A DNA stretch of 64,000 nt from Vitrella brassicaformis CCMP3155 (GCA_001179505.1 CDMY01000759.1:203488-267487), one strand, 5' to 3'. Counted from the stretch's first letter, positions 52,823 to 62,212 are shown. The notes: a model not told the origin generated them from the letters alone. A program made the numbers and translations.

Positions 52823-55800
52823 TCACCCAGCCACCACTGCCCCTGACGATGTCTCGTCAGCTGCACCATCGTCAGCTGCACCATCGAGCTCGATTTCCCA
52901 CAGGTTGACGCGGCCCTCCTCGCCCACCACAGCGTGGCCACCACCACCACCCAGCGACGTGTCTGTCTTCTCGCGAGTGAGGGTGGTGGTGGTCGGCTGG
53001 CCATCGGCAACAGCGGCAGCAGCCTGGTCGGTGGCTTGTGTCTGGAGGGGCGGTTGTGGGGCGGGAGGGTGTTTCTTCTTGCGGCCTCTGCCGCCGCCGT
53101 GTGTCGTGGGGACTTTGTCGTTGGCTGATGGGTCCCACTCGACGACCACCGACTCCCACAGATCGCCGGACAAGTCGACCTGACACGACGGACCCATGAG
53201 AACACACACATCGGATCGGTGGATTGGATGGATGGGGGGGTGCCTACCTTTCTGACGGTGCCCCCATACACGATGGGCTGTCCGTGCAGGTTTTTCCAGG
53301 CCATGCGGAAGCGACGCTGAATACACACAGATACACACACACACACCCCAAGGATGATTAACGTGACGTGACGCCTCACACATTTCTCTCCTGCAGTCCA
53401 CTCACCCCTGGCATGCAGCCTTTCGACAGAGCCTTCAGCACCCTGACGCACACACACACACACACACACACCCCTTCATACGGCCCTGCACAAATGCATG
53501 TGGGTGTTTGTGTCCGTCCTGCTACCTTTTTCTGGGTACAATAAAGTCGGGCATGTGGCTGTGCAGCGGCACGCACACCATGGCGTACCGGCTCTCACTC
53601 ATCTGCGGCCCCTCGCACACAGGACCCGACACACCACGAACCGAGCTGCCCGGCCCACCCACACCACCACATGCACCATACGGCCCTCGGCGTTTCCTCT
53701 TGCCCCTCTCCACACCCACACCCTTTTCGTTGTCCTCTTCCACCATGGCAGACTCTTGCTTGACGGCGGGAGGGGCCATCATCATCTCAGTGTCGGTCTC
53801 TTCTTTCTTGACATCTACCTTGACACACGGGTGTGGGTGGTGCCGCGCCGCGCCGCTGACCGCCATTTGCAGCTGCACCGATTCGGGGGAAGGGTCGGGA
53901 GCCTCGCTCGTGACCTCAGATTTGACGGGTGGCGGTGGTTGGTCGATCAGCATCATGGTGTCTTGCGGCTGCTGTGAAGGCGAGCTTGTATCGGCCATGG
54001 CCGTGGCGTGGTTGACCACCTCTCTCTCGCTGGCGTCCTCCATGACGGCATCTCCATCCTCAATGTCGTCACCAGCGGAGGCGAGCACCAGCTGCCCCCG
54101 TGTCGACCGTCTTGACGGCGGCAACCTCTCCCTCTCCCTCTCTGTGTGGTGTGTGGGCGACTCGCTGTGGTCCATTATTGCCATCCGGTGGTGCAGCATC
54201 CTGTCCGTCATGGTCGACCGCCGCTTGCTCCGACGCCGGCCGTCAGCGTCGACCATCAACGAGTCGCTCGACGCGTTGGCGAGACTGCTCAGCCCGCTCT
54301 CCAGCCTGTCGGGGAGACCTCGCGGCTTGTATGCGCGCCGTCGGCCTTCCTGAGGCGGGGGCGGTGGGATGACGTTGTCGGGAGAGGGGGAGGGGCAGGA
54401 GGATGGCACGGATGGCTGTGGCTGGGGCTGTGATGGAGAGGGGGAGGGGGATTGGGCGGGGGTCTCCTCTGTGTGAGGGGGCAGCGTGAGCGGCTGAGAT
54501 AGCGACGACAGAGACGAAGCGACCGCATCGGCCTGGCTGGGGTGGCTCCTGACGCATTGCATTCATTCATACACGCACACATACAGCGTGAGACGGCGAG
54601 TCTCACAGCAGACAGACAGACACCTGTGCTCGGTCGACAAACTCACTCACCGTGGGTTGAATCTGAGCCATATCCTGACATAAGGAATCGGCTGGGAGGC
54701 CGGCTTGCCCGCATCCTCACTCTCGAGCGGCTGCAGCGACGCCAGCCGAGCCCTCAACGACATCAGACCCTCGAACGGCGTCCTGCTGTGCCCATACTGC
54801 GCACCAAACAGCGCCGCCAACCGCTCGGTCTCACTGTCCTCCTCCCCCCTCGCCCGCGGCACCAAGCCGGTCACCCCGGGATGGTAAAACACCTTGACGA
54901 CCTCCGCCTCTTCGATGTGGCCGGAGTGGTGAGGCACTGAGTGCTCGATGGGGTATGGCGGGGCGTGGTGGGCGTGCGAGCGTCTGTGGTAGTGCTTGTG
55001 GGTGAAGTGGGTGATCTGCATGGCGTGGCCGCTCCTGAAGTAGAAGACGCGGGTGTCCTCTGTGGGGATTTCGACGAAGGGGGCGGCGGCCAAGGAGAGG
55101 GTGGGGAGGGGGAAGAGCAGCGCCGTCTCGCGGCAGTGCTGATAGCCCGTCCTATCGGTCACGTTGATCAGGTTCCTCAGCTTCACATCGTCGAGCGCCA
55201 GTGTGTGCCACGCAGATGCAATCACCCCGACATGGTCAAGCGCCTCCCATCCCTCCGAAGCCTCCCCCACACCCTCCTCCACACGGCGTGAAGGCGCGTC
55301 AGCGAGTATCAGTCGGCTGGTGTCGTTGAGGAGCTGCAGCCACGCCTGTGGTCGGAATGGCGGCCATGGGGATGTGGGTGTGGATGCGGCGGTGCGGTGT
55401 GTGCTGCGCAGGGACGAGAGGTAGGGGTGGGTGTCGAAGAGGTTGTTGAGGTAGACCAGACAGGTGCGAGTGGGCGCCTGACAGACAGACAGACAGACAG
55501 GCACAGAGAGACTGACTGATGGATGCAGGCATCTCTCTGTGTGTCTGTGTGTGTGTGTGTGTGTGAATGCACTCATACCATGACTTGTTGTGGTGTGATG
55601 CCTTGCTGCTCGTAGACGGGCCATCTGGCGACCCACTCACACATGTCGCGAATCGGCTGCAGCCACTCGTCCTACACGCAGACACACGAAAGGAGCGCCA
55701 CTCTCATGACATTTTTCGCCGTTCCCCATCGTCCCGACCCCACCAAGAACTGCCTGACGGCTTCATCCATCGTCTTCTTCTCCTCCCGTTGGTTGTCCAG

Positions 55801-58800
55801 TGCGTCGGCTGCCTCCCTCCACAGGTCATAGCACATCGGCACCAGCACCAGCTTCTCCACCTCGAGCAGATGGTGCACCACCGCCATTACACGCAACACC
55901 CACCACGGACGAGCCGCCTCAACATGATCGCGGTGACGATGGTGACCCACCCTCCGTGTGGCCAGTGGTGCGATGGGCTCGGGGGTGTGTGTGCTGTCCG
56001 CCACACCGTTGGCCTTTTCCTTGCCGTTGTTGTCTTCTGGGGGCCTGGGTGTGGGGACGTCGGCAGTGGCTGACGAGTGGGTGTGGGAGGGGGGGTGCGA
56101 GGGGGGGCGCTTCCGCCGCTGAAGCGTGGCCTCTTGGACGGTCGTCAGGGCCTTCTTAAGAGCAGACTCTCTGCACGCAAAAAGGAAAGTAAGACAATAA
56201 GACAACAAGACAACACGCACGCACACGCGGACACGACACGGCCGCTGTGTATCTGTGGACAAACGTCGCTTCTCCCCCCTGCTCACCGTTTTGTGACGCT
56301 CGATAGCGATGCAATGAGCTGCTGCAGCCGCCCCATGCCCCCATCCTCATCGAGATCGATGTACCCCCAGCACCCGCCATACGCCTCGCTCGCACTCGCG
56401 CTCTCGCCGCCCTCGTGCGCCCCCAGCGGCCCCCTCACAAACCGCTCTCTCTCGCCGTCACGCACGGCCGATGAGATGCCTCTCCGAGAGTCGAAAATGC
56501 GGCCTCTCTGACCGAGACGGCCGACGGGCTCTTTTGACGAGGGTGAGGGGGATCTGCTTGTGGGTTGCTGCTCGGTGGTGGTGGTGGTGGCGGTGGTGTC
56601 GTCTTCGGTGCTGTTGGGCATGAGCTTCTTGCGGAGGATTCTGATGAGGGCGTCGGTGTCTTGCATATCGTCGCGGCGCCACTCTGTGCCTGAAGGTCGG
56701 TCCAGCTCCACCCAGACCCGGCTGCAGCCCATCTCAGCACCGAAGTAGAAGTACCTGCAAGTGAGAGCATCCAGCCATCGATGCAGGCGTCTTCTGTGTG
56801 TCTGTTGCTGCTCACCGATTGAGGTATCTGTCCTGGCCGATCGGCTCGGCCCGCACAGCGAGGTCAGGGGCGTGGCTCAGCACCCGCAGCACCGGGTGGT
56901 CTTCCGTCGGAGCCTCCTCGATGTTGTCCTTCTCCTTGTCCTTGTCGGCCTCTCCCTTCTTGGCCTTTCCCTTGCTGAGATCAAGGAAGGGTATCCAGCC
57001 ATGGCGACTGCCCACGCCGTTCCACGCCTCCTCGGCCATCGACCCACCAGCTATCTGACCAATGACGCGCTCCCCCTCCTCCCCCAAAGCTGCGAGCAGA
57101 TCCGCCCGCTTCATGTGGCCGCTGGGCGCTTTGGGCGGCGGGATGATGTCATCCTCGTCTCTGGTGTCCTGATGGGGCGGGGGAGGGGGCGTGAGGAGGC
57201 TCTCTGGCGGGGGAGGGATGGTCAGTGTGGCTTGGTCGCTGAGGACGCCGTTCGGCTGCGCCTCGCTCGTCTTCGGTGACGTGTCGGTCTCCATGGCAAC
57301 GGGCGACTCGTCCAGCAAGGAGGATCTGCTCCGCCCACGACCTGCCTTCGGCTTGGCCTTGGCCCGCCCTCTCTTGGTTGTGCCGGCCGGCTTGCCTCGT
57401 TTGGCGCTCTGGCTGCCTCTGTTGACTGATGGGGATGCCTGTGGTGTGGAGGTGGCGCGCTGCAGCTGAGGACTGGGGGTGGGCGGCTGAGAGGGGGCGT
57501 CCGACGCGGCGGGCTGGTTGGTGTCACCACCCTTGTCAGCCCCACCACCACCGGCAGCTGCAGCTGTGGTGTCTTTGTCTTTGTCCTTTTTGTCCCGGTC
57601 CCTTTGCTGCTTGGGGAAGATGAGCTTCTGGATGTCCAGTTGGAGGTCGGTGCGAAGGCGGAGGTAGTCCTTGTAGAGAGGGAGGGAGGGGGAGCCGCAG
57701 GCCACCTCGTCCAGCAGCCACTGGAAGGTCAGAAGACGGTCCACCACACTCAGAGAGGAATAGCCACCACAGCTGGCGACCAGAGAGAGAGAGAGAGAGA
57801 GAGAGACATCCATGCGTGTATGTGTGCGTGTGTGGGGCTGTGTGCGTGTGGGTGTGGGTGGCGTACTTGAGCTTGACGAGAATGTTGTGGTATCTCTGTG
57901 GCGGGTCGAGCCCTTTGCTGATGGCCTTATCCTCGTCAAACTCGAAGTGGTACTCACGATCGCCCTCCTCCTTCAGCCCCCCGACAGCCCTCGTCTCTCT
58001 CACTGCCGCCGTGGCCGTCTCATCCCCCTCCCTCTCTCTCTCCCTCTCCCTCTCCCTCTCGCCCTCCTGCTGCTCGTCAATGCTGTTAGTCTCTTCCTCC
58101 ATCATCACATCGCCATCTGGGTCGTCAGAGCGCTCTCTCTTGCCTCTGTCCGCTCCACCCCCACCGCCCCCCACTGCCCTTGGCGTGTACATGGCGTCGA
58201 AGAGCACCCCCTGCAGCACCGCTGGCCACGTCAGCTCGCTCAGCCAGTGCTGCCACCCGTCCGCACGAGCGAAGAACCAGTGACTCAGGAGCCGCTTGGT
58301 GAAGGTGTGCAGGGGTCCCGTGTTGATGGTGCTGTCGGCCCCCTTCTCCTGCTGCCGCTGCAGGAGCTCGCGAGAGAGCATCCACGACCGGATCGGCGCT
58401 TGGGAGATGCGCAGGAACGGCGGGATGGCACCGCTGGCAAGGCTTGTTGTTTTCCTCTTCTCTCTCCTCTCCTTGTCTGCGGCGGCCTTGTTGACCTTCC
58501 CTCCGCCCTCCTTGCTCCTCCCCTCAGCGGCAGCAGCATCTTCCTGCGGGGAGATGCTCCACAGGTAGAGGTTGAGCAGCCGACAAGCCAGCTGATCCAA
58601 TAAAGGCGGCCGCAGGTGCGCGACCAGCATCACGTCAATGGGCGTGTCCTTGGTGACGCCGGGCGTCGACACACCAGCAGCAGGAGCATGAGGGGGGAGG
58701 GGTGTGTCGACAAGGGCTGTCTGGAAGTCTTGCAGAGAGAGGGGTGGGTGTGAGGGGGGCGAGAGGATGAGTGCCTGTGGTGGTGGTGGTGAGGTGGCGG

Positions 58801-61511
58801 AGGTCGGCTCTCTGGAGGGGTCGGGGATGAAGGCATTCAGTTGGAAGTCTAACATGCCCCGGAAGGTCCGGCAAAACTCCCTGTGAGTGACATCAAATCA
58901 AAGGCAAAACCGAGACAGCCAGTGTCAGTGGGTGCATCTGTCTGTTGGGGTGTGCTGACTGGAAGACTGACCAGATCCCGATGAGTGGCGTGTGGGGGTA
59001 GATCTTCACAGGCAGCTTTAGCGCCATAGGAAACGACTGTCGGTCGTTGAGCGATATCTCGAGCTCGTCCCCCTCCTCCTTGCCAGGCATCCGGCGAACC
59101 CTCCGAGCGCTGCCGCTGGTGCTGGTGGTTGCTGCCGCCTTCCCACTGGTTGTGGCGGTTGCTCTCTTGCGCCCCTTGGTCACCCACTTCTCGCTCCGCG
59201 TGTGGAGCGTCTGCGCAAAAGCCGTGCCCGCCAACGTAGCCGCCATGGTGGCTCCCGCATCCGCGGGAGGAGCATCGTTCCCATCTGGGCCTGCCGGCTT
59301 TCCGCTCTCCTGTGTGGGTATGGGCGCCTCGATGTCTTTCAGCTGGCTGTGCAGGAAGTCGCTCATCTCGTAGATGTCCTCTTCACTCTGCAGGCCGGAC
59401 ACATAGAGCGGCTCCCCCCACCCAGTCATATTGGGGTCGGCCTGGCCGCCGGAAGAAGACGACTGAGAGGGCTGCTGGTGGTGGATCGGTGCGGGGGTGG
59501 TGAGCTTGCCGACGAGGTGGCGGTAGGTGACGTTGGGCCTGTGCAGGAGGGCTTTGACGATGCGCGTGACGACGGCGAACTTGAGCTTGGCTGACTGGAA
59601 GGTGGGGCCGTAGTCGGGGTGGACGAGGCCGCTGTCGATGCGGTACCATGTGTCGCTGTCGGACACCAGCCACAGAGACGGCTCGTCCTTCCAAGACAGG
59701 CCGTAGTCGATGCACCTGAGTGTACCACACACGCACGTGGAGAGAGGGAGAGAGGGCATGTGTGTGGCGGTATTCTCTGCTTGTACATTCATTGTGTGAA
59801 GTTACCAGTCCGCGATGCGCGCCTTGACAGGTATCCACGGCATCAGTGGTGGCGAGGTCGGCGGCTGGCCCGCACCGGCACCGCCACCACCATCACCATC
59901 CTTGCCCTTGTTGTGGTCATCTCCGCCGCCCTCTGCCTGCTCTCTCTGCCCCGGCTTGTCTTTGTCTTTCTCTCCGCCAATCTCACCCTCGACACCTATG
60001 TCCCTGGTTGCTGTTGCTGCTACACCACCCTCTTGCTGCTGCTGCTGCTGCTGCTGGTTGTCAGGTTTGGTGTAGTTGAAGGGCACCAGATGGGCGTACA
60101 ACCACAGCTTGCCCTTCTGCTCTGCGTCATCCTACATTAACACATCAACACACACAGAGGAGATGAAACGCGCCAAGTGTGTTGGCCCCACTCACCCTAC
60201 CTACCAGGGACTCGATCGGGGCGAACTGGCCCGCCTCGTCCCGCACACAGAAGTTGCTGACAAGCCTGGTCAGGTTGCCGTCAGGCGTCCTCATGCTGTA
60301 TTGCCACGCCAAGCCATCACCCACCTCGCCCTCGGCACGGTATACCACGCCCTTGCCGTCCGAGAGGGGCAGGAAAGGTGGCAGGAGGCCCTTGCGCCGC
60401 TTCCACACAGGCGAGTCGGAGGACACGCGCACACCATTGCTCTGATTCTGATCCTGGTCGTTGTCTCGCTTGCTCTTGCTGCCGCCGACTCCGCCTTTTC
60501 CTCTCGTGGCCTTTCTCTTGCCCCCGGCAGCCACCGAATACGACTCATCAGACGCGCTGCCGCTGCCAGCCCCTCCACCACCAGCACCATCCTGGCTCGA
60601 ATGACCACCACCTCCATCGCTTTGCCCGTCGCCACCCTGCCTCTGCCGCTTTCCCTCGCCCATTGGTTCATCCTCGGCCGCCCTGTCCTTGATGAGACGC
60701 GCGGGCGGGTGCGATGTCCGGAACGACCGACCGTTGGGGTCCCTGCCCCTCGGACGCTGCAGCTGGCCGCTCAAATGCAGTGGCGACGACTCACGTGAGC
60801 TCGTGTCGCCGACATCTGCCTCCTGCTGCCGCCGTGGCGGGGGCCGCTTGGGTTGCGGCCGGTCCATCGCGGGTCTGGATGGGGGTCGGTGAGTGGCCGA
60901 CCCGCGACCTCTCCCCGCCGCCCGTGGCTTGCTCGATGCCTTTGTTGATGCCTTGCTCGACGCCTTGTTGCTTGGCGGCTTCCGCGGGGGCGGCGGGGGG
61001 GAACGGAGCATCGTGGGCAGACGAATGGCGCGGAACGATGGCCTGACACATCACATCACACCAATGCATTTTTGTACACACGTCGTTTCGCCCCCCAATC
61101 ACAAAAACAATCTCCCTCTGACTGACTGACTGACTGACTGACCGACCTTCCAAAAGTGACGAACGTCGCGGGCAGCGGCCGCATCGATGCCGTCGTGGCA
61201 GTGGGCGGCCGCATCGCTGGCGCTGTCGCTGTCGCCGGTGGCCGCAATGTCGGTGCTGCTCCTACTGCTGCTGTCGTCGATGCCATCATGGGGAAGGGGT
61301 GGAATGGCGATGGGTACATGAATGGCTGGGCGAACATCTGCGGTGGGACGAGGGGAGGACGCATGGGCGGCCGGCCAGAGCCAGAACCAGGACCAGAACC
61401 AGCCAGAGAGGGAGAAGGGGATGGTGCGGGGGGCCGGGGAGGAGCACCACCAGATGCATCACCGCTCGCAGCAGGAGGGCGGTTGAAGGAAGAGGGGCTC
61501 GGGTGATGCAT
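52823..61511 (-). CDS. Large chromatin protein: RFTS (DNMT1 replication-foci) domain, DDT, WHIM1, WHIM2/3 (WSD), and BRWD/PHIP-type C-terminal domain; extra 5' exons possible
   Basis: RFTS: TRLVSNFCVRDEAGQFAPIESL...IADW|CIDYG...LVSDSDTWYRI...DYGPTF. DDT: LIGIW|EFCRTFRGML..SLQDFQTAL, then ELTWPAVL. WHIM1: YSSLSVVDRLLTFQWLLDEV. WSD: PIGQDRYLNR|YFYF..RVWVE and WGY..LQQLIASL..R|ESALKKAL. C-terminus PDFIV..W..G.RFRM..WESVVVEWD..RVNLWEIE; TGA 52823. Confidence 0.8.
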
Positions 61512-62212
61512 ACTCAGTCAGCGATGCGGACGGGGAGCCAACACACACACCTGAACCGAACCAGTCAGGGGAACAGACAGACACATAACATTCACACAGA
61601 CAGTCATGCACTCCATCTGCAATTGAGTGGGTGCACTGCAAACACCCTTATTGCATTGCAACCTGCCTCTCCGCTCACCGTCGGGCGGCCGCACAGCAAG
61701 ATCAGCACCTTCGCAGCAGCACAAGACGTCTGGTCCTCCACGCCCCCCACTGCAGTGTACTGTCCCGAATCGGTCCCGTTTGCCGTCCTCAAGTGATGAT
61801 GGCACCCCTCCCGACGAGCACAGCGCCGCGAGAGAGACACTACGGTGTATGCGCCTCGCCTCGCCGTCCGGCCGTCGATTCGCGGCGGCAGGCAGATCAG
61901 CTGCACTCGAGGATGGGCGTCAGTAGCTGGTGAGCTCAAACTGGCAGGGAGTCGGGGAAGGGGAGAAGGGCGAAGCAGATGAGACGCGCTGGACGGCCGA
62001 TGGGCGACAGATTGGCTCGCATGACGATGGAACTCTTGAGCTGATATGCAATGCTGGACACACTCGTGGGATGAGGCTGACGAACGACACCGCAACAGCA
62101 GCGGGACTTCCCTGCCCACCGATTTGCGAGCTTAGCTGCGAGTGCGAGCTTGGGATGGATCGCGCAAGAAACAAACGAAAAAGACTAGGGAGGCAAGCGC
62201 GATGCTCTGGTG

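What the first reader, a model, noticed from the sequence alone, without database searches (positions are those of the whole stretch)
52823..61511. RFTS domain fused to an ISWI-partner DDT-WHIM module and a BRWD-type domain, with no methyltransferase
Seen: one spliced minus-strand frame carries, in order, an RFTS-like domain (about 59330-60290), a DDT-like domain (about 58600-59040), WHIM1 (about 57690-57760), WHIM2/3 (about 56150-56900) and a BRWD/PHIP-like C-terminal domain (about 52900-53540). No C5-methyltransferase, PHD or bromodomain motif was found. Established: RFTS belongs to DNMT1/MET1 and fungal Raf2, and in DNMT1 reads ubiquitylated H3 at replication foci. DDT-WHIM proteins (ACF1/BAZ1A, WSTF, Itc1) are ISWI remodeller subunits. 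Inference: this lineage may use a replication-foci or ubiquitin-histone reader to recruit ISWI nucleosome spacing to new chromatin, without DNA methylation. I do not know a described protein with this architecture.
Basis: partly seen in the sequence, partly recalled or inferred. Interest (0 to 1): 0.85.

Follow-up and report, generated by a model that had tools for sequence, protein, structure and literature searches.

The report
Vitrella ortholog of ISWI scaffold TgRFTS
A real, spliced 14-exon gene encodes a 2,514-residue chromatin protein that joins a DNMT1-type RFTS domain to the DDT-WHIM module of ISWI remodeller partners. The same protein is already known in Toxoplasma (TgRFTS, an ISWI scaffold) and Plasmodium, so this is a relative's copy, not a new design.

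Summary
One minus-strand gene runs from the ATG at 61511 to the stop at 52823-52825: 14 exons, 13 GT-AG introns, 2514 aa. RNA contigs confirm six introns and put the RFTS and DDT exons on one spliced contig. The protein carries, in order, an RFTS/RFD domain, DDT, WHIM1, WSD (WHIM2/3) and a C-terminal ARF/BRWD-type ancillary module. No methyltransferase, PHD or bromodomain was found.

The novelty claim fails. Homologues with the same block order are Toxoplasma/Hammondia 228120 (UniRef name "RFTS domain-containing protein") and the Plasmodium "chloroquine resistance marker protein". A 2014 paper already reported RFD plus Auxin_resp in these proteins. Later papers cite Pachano et al. 2025 for a TgSNF2h (ISWI)-AP2VIII-2-TgRFTS complex in Toxoplasma.

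The replication-foci or ubiquitin-H3 reading is untested.

What is new is modest. Earlier scan notes, which I did not verify, assign this genome to the free-living alga Vitrella brassicaformis. If so, the architecture predates parasitism.

Direct Pfam hits on the window fail because introns split every domain. The evidence is transitive, through orthologs. Seven of the 13 introns are predicted only.

The parts
52823..61511 (-). Whole coding region: 14 exons, 2514 aa. Exons: 61511-61147, 61042-60205, 60131-59806, 59715-58972, 58880-57867, 57772-56816, 56754-56287, 56170-55744, 55671-55579, 55477-54651, 54548-53526, 53442-53406, 53316-53248, 53179-52823.
   Evidence: The spliced ORF has no internal stop. 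Six introns come from RNA contigs and seven are predicted. Three of the predicted junctions (exons 11/12, 12/13, 13/14) are bridged by contiguous alignment to the Hammondia ortholog.
61512..61551 (-). 5' UTR of the first coding exon. An in-frame TGA lies at 61520-61518 and a likely acceptor AG at 61552-61551. More 5' UTR lies upstream.
   Evidence: Sequence. Contigs of X6 and X1 both end at 61551, and the X6 record has 435 further letters upstream.
59481..60324 (-). RFTS / DNMT1-RFD domain, aa 362-588, spread over exons 2-4, with a low-complexity insert of about 80 aa in exon 3.
   Evidence: Exon 4 alone found 12 protein clusters among 1.84 billion (best E=1.4e-11), and all 12 pass the Pfam PF12047 gathering score. 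An HMM built from homologues only scores the spliced protein at 103 bits, E=7.7e-29. The family profile hits only DNMT1 RFTS chains in the PDB, best E=0.0017. Direct Pfam on one exon gives E=0.18.
58559..59012 (-). DDT-like domain, aa 745-865. Helix 1 is split by the RNA-confirmed intron 58971-58881, and there are two proline-rich inserts.
   Evidence: The motif LIGIWEFCRTFRGML aligns with LLEVQDFCRVFIEML of the T. gondii ortholog, and that stretch passes the Pfam DDT gathering score (23.6 bits). The ortholog-only HMM gives 6.7 bits at aa 749-769, against at most 3.2 bits in 500 shuffles. ESM Atlas nearest named clusters are DDT/WHIM1 at 0.84, a lead only. Direct Pfam gives no hit.
57610..58306 (-). 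WHIM1-like region, aa 950-994 and 1086-1150, across intron 57866-57773, with an acidic insert.
   Evidence: LTWPAVLQGVLFDAMYTPR aligns with LTWPLVLQRMLFDCLYSPR of Hammondia and LTWPLYLKKCLF of P. knowlesi. The ortholog-only HMM gives 11.0 bits, against at most 0.1 bits in shuffles. No Pfam WHIM1 hit in the window or in the orthologs.
56083..56856 (-). WSD (WHIM2/WHIM3), aa 1402-1600, split by introns 56815-56755 and 56286-56171.
   Evidence: The ortholog-only HMM gives 34.7 bits, E=6.4e-8, at aa 1402-1432 (motif GQDRYLNRYFYF). The aligned positions of P0010, P0011, P0012 and P0017 pass the Pfam PF15613 gathering score.
54845..55072 (-). Conserved block upstream of the ancillary domain, aa 1880-1955 (TRVFYFRSGH ... 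VKVFYHPGV). Probably the first half of an ARF/BRWD-type beta module.
   Evidence: phmmer against Hammondia gives E=5e-4 at Z=1e5. The ortholog-only HMM gives 22.6 bits. No Pfam hit. The likeness to the ARF N-terminal VYFPQGH motif is from my own knowledge.
52868..53623 (-). ARF/BRWD-type ancillary (Tudor-like) domain, aa 2329-2500, over exons 11-14, with an insert of about 55 aa before RVNLWEIE.
   Evidence: The ortholog-only HMM gives 19.2 and 15.7 bits. The region aligns to the stretch of T. gondii P0017 that passes the PF06507 ARF_AD gathering score (28.7 bits; alignment).

Best explanation
This is the ortholog of the apicomplexan RFTS-DDT-WHIM-ancillary-domain protein (Toxoplasma/Hammondia 228120; Plasmodium PF14_0463, 'CRMP'). 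Earlier scan notes assign this genome to Vitrella brassicaformis.

It most likely works as the large non-catalytic scaffold of an ISWI (SNF2h-type) nucleosome remodelling complex. The DDT-WHIM1-WSD module would bind the HAND-SANT-SLIDE part of the ATPase and linker DNA, as in ACF1, Itc1 and Ioc3. The N-terminal RFTS domain and the C-terminal Tudor-like ancillary module would be chromatin- or partner-binding surfaces that direct the remodeller.

Shown: the gene, its splicing over six introns, the RFTS domain, and the colinear orthology. Inferred: ISWI binding, by transfer from Toxoplasma. Unknown: what the RFTS and ancillary domains bind.
For: - One spliced ORF, with the RFTS and DDT exons on one RNA contig.
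- Exon 4 finds only RFD-bearing proteins. The three long ones also carry WSD, and Hammondia adds sub-threshold DDT and ARF_AD hits.
- The T. gondii ortholog passes Pfam gathering scores for RFD, DDT, WSD and ARF_AD.
- Six blocks of the window protein match ortholog-only HMMs in the same order, each above all 500 local shuffles (alignments).
- The RFD profile hits only DNMT1 RFTS chains in the PDB.
- V. brassicaformis is reported to keep a SNF2h-like ISWI (bioRxiv 10.1101/2025.09.03.673926).
Against: - No Pfam family reaches significance on the window's own exon pieces.
- The DDT match in the window is weak (6.7 bits).
- AlphaFold2 of the DDT-WHIM1 exon was unusable (pLDDT 44).
- That TgRFTS is TGME49_228120 is my inference, from the UniRef name and PMC5963570. 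The primary paper is not held.
- Plasmodium is reported to have lost SNF2h yet keeps this protein, so the partner is not fixed across the family.
- Seven introns, including intron 1 and all those 3' of 56000, have no RNA support here.
- I did not verify the organism.
Confidence: 0.7

Rival explanations
1. It is a remnant of a DNMT1 gene that lost its catalytic part, as PMC5963570 proposed for TGME49_228120. On this view the RFTS is a relic with no link to ISWI.
For: The RFD is a true homologue of the DNMT1 RFTS. No methyltransferase domain is present. PMC5963570 suggests this reading.
Against: The RFD is followed by DDT, WHIM1, WSD and an ancillary module, in the same order in the window, in coccidia and in part in Plasmodium. 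No BAH, CXXC or methyltransferase traces were found. The long ORF and conserved blocks argue for selection on the whole protein. TgRFTS is reported as an ISWI subunit.
Confidence: 0.05
2. It is a chromatin reader or transcription-factor-like scaffold that acts without ISWI in this organism. It might work through its ARF-type ancillary domain, as PMC4046975 suggested for PF14_0463, or with another remodeller.
For: PMC4046975 proposes transcription-factor-like activity. Plasmodium keeps the protein although SNF2h is reported lost there. The DDT of the window protein is very divergent.
Against: DDT-WHIM-WSD modules are known only as ISWI-binding modules (established knowledge of ACF1/BAZ, Itc1, Ioc3 and plant DDT proteins). 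The Toxoplasma protein is reported in a core complex with TgSNF2h. Vitrella is reported to keep a SNF2h-like gene.
Confidence: 0.2
3. It is a gene-model artefact: two neighbouring genes, one RFTS and one DDT-WHIM, joined by reading through.
For: No single RNA contig covers the whole gene. Two X6 contigs meet inside exon 5 with only about 9 bases of overlap. The 3' third has no RNA evidence here.
Against: One X6 contig runs from exon 2 through the RFTS exons across intron 58971-58881 into the DDT exon, with at least 255 letters on each side. The frame stays open across all 13 junctions. Orthologs have the same order in single proteins, including an uninterrupted 2606-aa ORF on a Logan contig.
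Confidence: 0.03

Closest known systems
Toxoplasma gondii TgRFTS (inferred to be TGME49_228120 / TGGT1_228120; Hammondia HHA_228120)
   Same: Same six blocks in the same order: RFD, DDT, WHIM1, WSD, pre-ancillary block, ARF-type ancillary domain. No methyltransferase, PHD or bromodomain. Reported as the scaffold of the ISWI TgSNF2h complex.
   Different: The window protein has 2514 aa against about 3946 aa. Identity outside the RFD is low: only short motifs are shared, and the RFD C-half is about 39% identical. The host is said to be a free-living alga rather than a parasite. The gene has 13 introns.
Plasmodium 'chloroquine resistance marker protein' (PF14_0463; P. knowlesi P0010/P0015)
   Same: RFD (50% identity over 72 aa) and WSD at colinear positions. 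RFD plus Auxin_resp is reported for PF14_0463 (PMC4046975).
   Different: My block HMMs did not find the DDT or ancillary blocks in the P. knowlesi protein. Plasmodium is reported to lack SNF2h.
ACF1/BAZ1A, WSTF/BAZ1B, yeast Itc1 and Ioc3, plant DDT proteins (ISWI accessory subunits)
   Same: DDT - WHIM1 - WSD order. Presumed role in binding the ISWI HAND-SANT-SLIDE part and linker DNA.
   Different: No WAC, PHD, bromodomain or homeodomain. The ends carry an RFTS and an ARF/BRWD-type ancillary module instead. The DDT and WHIM1 are too divergent for Pfam in the window.
DNMT1/MET1 RFTS domain and S. pombe Raf2
   Same: Homologous RFD. All 12 homologues pass PF12047, and the family profile hits only DNMT1 RFTS chains in the PDB.
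   Different: No CXXC, BAH or C5-methyltransferase. I saw no CxxC zinc motif N-terminal to the domain (reading of the sequence; the DNMT1 zinc site is from my own knowledge). There is an 80-aa low-complexity insert inside the domain.
ARF DNA-binding-domain ancillary domain / BRWD-PHIP ancillary (cryptic Tudor) domain
   Same: Motifs of the type RFRM...Y.GT(V/I)..V......W.S..V.WD...RV..WEIE. The aligned T. gondii stretch passes PF06507.
   Different: No B3, WD40 or bromodomains. Long inserts. Only the first third of the Pfam model is matched in the ortholog.

Membership tests
Apicomplexan RFTS-DDT-WHIM scaffold (TgRFTS / 228120 / PF14_0463) | N-terminal DNMT1-type RFD | tested here: met
   103 bits, E=7.7e-29 against an ortholog-only HMM. 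All homologues pass the PF12047 gathering score.
Apicomplexan RFTS-DDT-WHIM scaffold (TgRFTS / 228120 / PF14_0463) | Colinear DDT, WHIM1, WSD, pre-ancillary and ancillary blocks after the RFD | tested here: met
   Six blocks in the same order, each above 500 local shuffles. Pairwise alignments. The DDT block is weak (6.7 bits).
Apicomplexan RFTS-DDT-WHIM scaffold (TgRFTS / 228120 / PF14_0463) | Physical association with an ISWI ATPase (SNF2h type) | not testable with these tools
   Known only for Toxoplasma, and only through papers that cite Pachano 2025.
DDT-WHIM ISWI accessory subunits (BAZ/ACF1/Itc1/Ioc3) | DDT domain (PF02791) | tested here: inconclusive
   No Pfam hit on the window pieces; the domain is split by intron 58971-58881. 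The aligned T. gondii stretch passes the gathering score at 23.6 bits. ESM lead at 0.84.
DDT-WHIM ISWI accessory subunits (BAZ/ACF1/Itc1/Ioc3) | WHIM1 (PF15612) | tested here: inconclusive
   Only a conserved LTWP.VLQ..LFD motif shared with orthologs. No Pfam WHIM1 hit in the window or orthologs.
DDT-WHIM ISWI accessory subunits (BAZ/ACF1/Itc1/Ioc3) | WSD / WHIM2-3 (PF15613) | tested here: met
   Met through orthologs. 34.7 bits, E=6.4e-8 against an ortholog-only HMM whose members pass the PF15613 gathering score at the aligned site. A direct Pfam scan of the window pieces fails because of the intron split.
BAZ family proper (BAZ1A/1B/2A/2B) | C-terminal PHD finger and bromodomain | tested here: not met
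   No PHD or bromodomain hit at E<=1 in any open frame of the gene.
DNMT1/MET1 | BAH domains and C5-cytosine methyltransferase domain | tested here: not met
   No such Pfam hits in the window frames or in the orthologs.
BRWD/PHIP | WD40 repeats and tandem bromodomains next to the ancillary domain | tested here: not met
   None found. Only the ancillary-type module is shared, and the Pfam family matched by the ortholog is ARF_AD PF06507.

The most novel reading that the evidence does not exclude
The RFTS domain of this scaffold still reads a replication-coupled mark, as DNMT1's RFTS does with ubiquitylated H3 or a PAF15-like protein. ISWI spacing would then be delivered behind replication forks. 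The free-living alga, which by earlier scan notes also has DNMT-like genes without an RFTS, would show the ancestral state in which RFTS-based targeting belongs to a remodeller rather than to the maintenance methyltransferase.
Probability: 0.12. Interest if true: 0.6.

Novelty: new member of a known kind. Interest (0 to 1): 0.27.

Why it matters
It places the RFTS-DDT-WHIM-ancillary scaffold, characterised so far only in parasites (Toxoplasma TgRFTS), in their free-living photosynthetic relative. That means the fusion arose before parasitism and before the loss of cytosine methylation in Apicomplexa. It also argues against reading the parasite RFTS as a decayed DNMT1.

It gives a complete, partly RNA-verified gene model that can be used for comparative work on ISWI targeting. 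It is not a new architecture.

Tried and rejected
- **Pfam on stop-to-stop frames and exact exons**. Only PF12047 at E=0.18. Introns split every domain, and a spliced protein cannot be given to the tools by reference, so I ran no hmmscan or HHpred on the full protein.
- **AlphaFold2 of exon 5 (DDT-WHIM1) with a 5-sequence alignment.** pLDDT 44, pTM 0.22. Not used for fold search.
- **ESM Atlas.** Exon 4 gave no usable hit. Exon 5 gave DDT/WHIM1 clusters at 0.84, a lead only.
- **Word-based homologue search with P0011 residues 320-520.** It found only T. gondii 228120.
- **Exon 1 to exon 2 junction.** I looked for an acceptor that would explain the RNA contig ending at 61155 and found none. The end is probably the tool's repeat skipping at the (GTCA)n run. 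Intron 61146-61043 is therefore a frame-based prediction.
- **Primary paper.** Pachano et al. 2025 is not held, and no held paper gives the gene ID of TgRFTS.
- **Self-match.** The 1.84-billion representative library returned no self-match. I cannot say whether a public gene model for this locus exists.
- **Paper search.** One search was badly framed and gave nothing.
- **PF3D7_1448500.** I guessed from memory that this is PF14_0463. I could not confirm it and do not use it.


Full report
**Gene model**

The region is GC-rich (about 60%) eukaryotic DNA with many short open frames on the minus strand. I laid public runs on 56000-61600.
- Contigs of run X6 skip six segments whose ends are CT..AC on the plus strand, which is GT..AG on the minus strand. 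Contigs of X2 and X3 keep those segments. So X6 is cDNA-derived and the others are genomic.
- After adjusting each cut to GT-AG, the confirmed introns are 60204-60132, 59805-59716, 58971-58881, 57866-57773, 56815-56755 and 56286-56171.
- One X6 contig covers exon 2 (from 60792), exon 3 and exon 4, and crosses the 58971-58881 joint with at least 255 letters on each side. From the record positions, it reaches about 58554. A second X6 contig covers 58562-56000 with three introns removed.
- The RFTS exons and the start of the DDT are therefore on one spliced RNA contig. The two contigs overlap by only about 9 bases inside exon 5, where the frame is open.

The frame is continuous from the ATG at 61511 through all confirmed junctions. 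I predicted the remaining introns from frame and from GT-AG sites with the local intron style. They are 61146-61043, 55743-55672, 55578-55478, 54650-54549, 53525-53443, 53405-53317 and 53247-53180.

The full model has 14 exons, a 7545-nt CDS and 2514 aa, with the stop at 52823-52825. An in-frame TGA at 61520-61518 fixes the start codon, and the 5' UTR continues upstream through at least one intron.

**RFTS domain**

Pfam on single frames gave only PF12047 at E=0.18, covering the C-terminal half of the model, because the domain lies on three exons.
- I searched exon 4 (247 aa) with HMMER against 1.84 billion representative proteins. It found 12 proteins, best E=1.4e-11, and all matched its first 80 residues or so.
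- All 12 pass the PF12047 gathering score.
- The spliced protein aligns over the whole domain: aa 362-588 against P0002 residues 450-657, E=2.8e-21 at Z=1e5.
- It scores 103 bits against an HMM built from homologues only.
- A profile of the family hits only DNMT1 RFTS chains among 177,635 PDB sequences: 6PZV, 3AV4, 5WVO, 5YDR and 3EPZ, best E=0.0017.
- The RFTS call is sound. The domain carries an 80-aa low-complexity insert.

**The rest of the architecture**

Three of the 12 homologues are long.
- P. knowlesi "chloroquine resistance marker protein" (2795 aa): RFD plus WSD.
- A Logan ORF (2606 aa): RFD plus WSD.
- Hammondia HHA_228120 (3944 aa): RFD and WSD, plus sub-threshold DDT and ARF_AD hits.

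T. gondii TGGT1_228120 (UniRef name "RFTS domain-containing protein") has precomputed RFD and WSD. When scanned in sub-ranges it also passes the gathering scores for DDT (23.6 bits) and ARF_AD (28.7 bits).

The window protein matches these proteins in the same order. The block HMMs below were built without the window sequence, and each real score exceeds all 500 locally shuffled copies (alignments; coordinates).

| Block | Residues (aa) | Score |
|---|---|---|
| RFD | 369-585 | 103 bits |
| DDT core | 749-769 | 6.7 bits (weak) |
| WHIM1 (LTWPAVLQGVLFDAMY) | 974-994 | 11 bits |
| WSD (GQDRYLNRYFYF) | 1402-1432 | 34.7 bits, E=6.4e-8 |
| Block before the ancillary domain | 1880-1955 | 22.6 bits |
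| Ancillary domain | 2329-2425 | 19.2 + 15.7 bits |

The alignment of the ancillary domain to Hammondia runs without a break across three predicted exon junctions, which supports those splice sites.

No methyltransferase, BAH, CXXC, PHD, bromodomain or WD40 hit appeared in any frame.

Two adjustments:
- The C-terminal module starts further upstream, at about 55072.
- The Pfam family that the ortholog matches is ARF_AD. It is of the same ancillary-domain type as BRWD/PHIP (my own knowledge).

**What is already known**

- PMC4046975 (2014) reported that PF14_0463 ("CRMP") has DNMT1-RFD plus Auxin_resp, and that Toxoplasma and Neospora proteins share both.
- PMC5963570 (2018) noted the RFTS annotation of TGME49_228120 and proposed a DNMT1 remnant.
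- PMC12589591 and bioRxiv 10.1101/2025.07.16.665172 cite Pachano et al., Nat Microbiol 2025. [quoted passage not shown]
- I could not read the primary paper. That TgRFTS is 228120 is my inference from the names.
- bioRxiv 10.1101/2025.09.03.673926 states that V. brassicaformis has both a SNF2h-like and a SNF2L-like ISWI, and that Plasmodium lost SNF2h.

**Mechanism**

The best-supported reading is that the protein is the large scaffold of a SNF2h-type ISWI complex. The DDT-WHIM1-WSD part would hold the ATPase's C-terminal module and linker DNA, as in ACF1, Itc1 and Ioc3 (established knowledge of those families). The RFTS and the Tudor-like C-terminal module would supply targeting. ISWI binding is transferred from Toxoplasma and not shown here.

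**Organism and novelty**

Several earlier follow-up notes of this scan call this genome Vitrella brassicaformis. I did not verify this. My own data show only that all relatives are apicomplexan.

If the assignment is right, the fusion predates parasitism and the DNMT1-remnant idea loses force.

The representative library returned no self-match, so I cannot say whether a public model of this gene exists.

Overall this is a correct observation of a known protein family in a further lineage. Interest is modest.

**Limits**

- Seven introns lack RNA support here.
- The DDT and WHIM1 calls in the window are at motif level.
- The structure prediction failed.
- No tool could take the spliced protein.

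Noticed in passing
window 55478-55578 and 53443-53525 (introns): Introns begin with (CA)n/(GA)n after the donor and end with (TC)n/(TG)n or (CTGT)n before the acceptor. This is the hairpin-like intron style that another note of this scan describes (s1-226988).
   Followed up: partly
window 61120-61146: A (GTCA)n tandem run starts just inside the predicted donor of intron 1. The reads tool cut its alignments there, so the exon 1 to exon 2 junction could not be confirmed.
   Followed up: partly
window 61551-61552 and upstream: RNA contigs of two runs stop at 61551, next to an AG. One of them carries 435 more letters upstream. The gene therefore has at least one 5' UTR intron and an untranslated first exon beyond 61551.
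   Followed up: no
P0002 (Hylaeus volcanicus LOC128884138, 1341 aa): This 'bee' protein has an RFD 70-78% identical to those of Gregarina sp. Poly1 and several Logan contigs. It probably comes from a gregarine contaminant scaffold in the bee assembly.
   Followed up: no
P0010/P0015 (P. knowlesi CRMP): Plasmodium keeps the RFD-WSD protein, although a preprint reports that Plasmodium lost the SNF2h-type ISWI. Its partner there may be SNF2L or something else.
   Followed up: no
window 58974-59714 (exon 4) against the representative library: The HMMER search of 1.84 billion representatives gave no near-identical hit (best 43-50% identity). The public protein set may lack a correct model of this gene.
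   Followed up: no
window aa 605-640 of the model, about 59430-59325: A motif after the Pfam RFD (GWGEPLYVSG...MSDFLHSQLKDIE) is shared with the gregarine-type homologue P0002. It may be the helical C-lobe of the RFTS, which the Pfam model does not cover.
   Followed up: no
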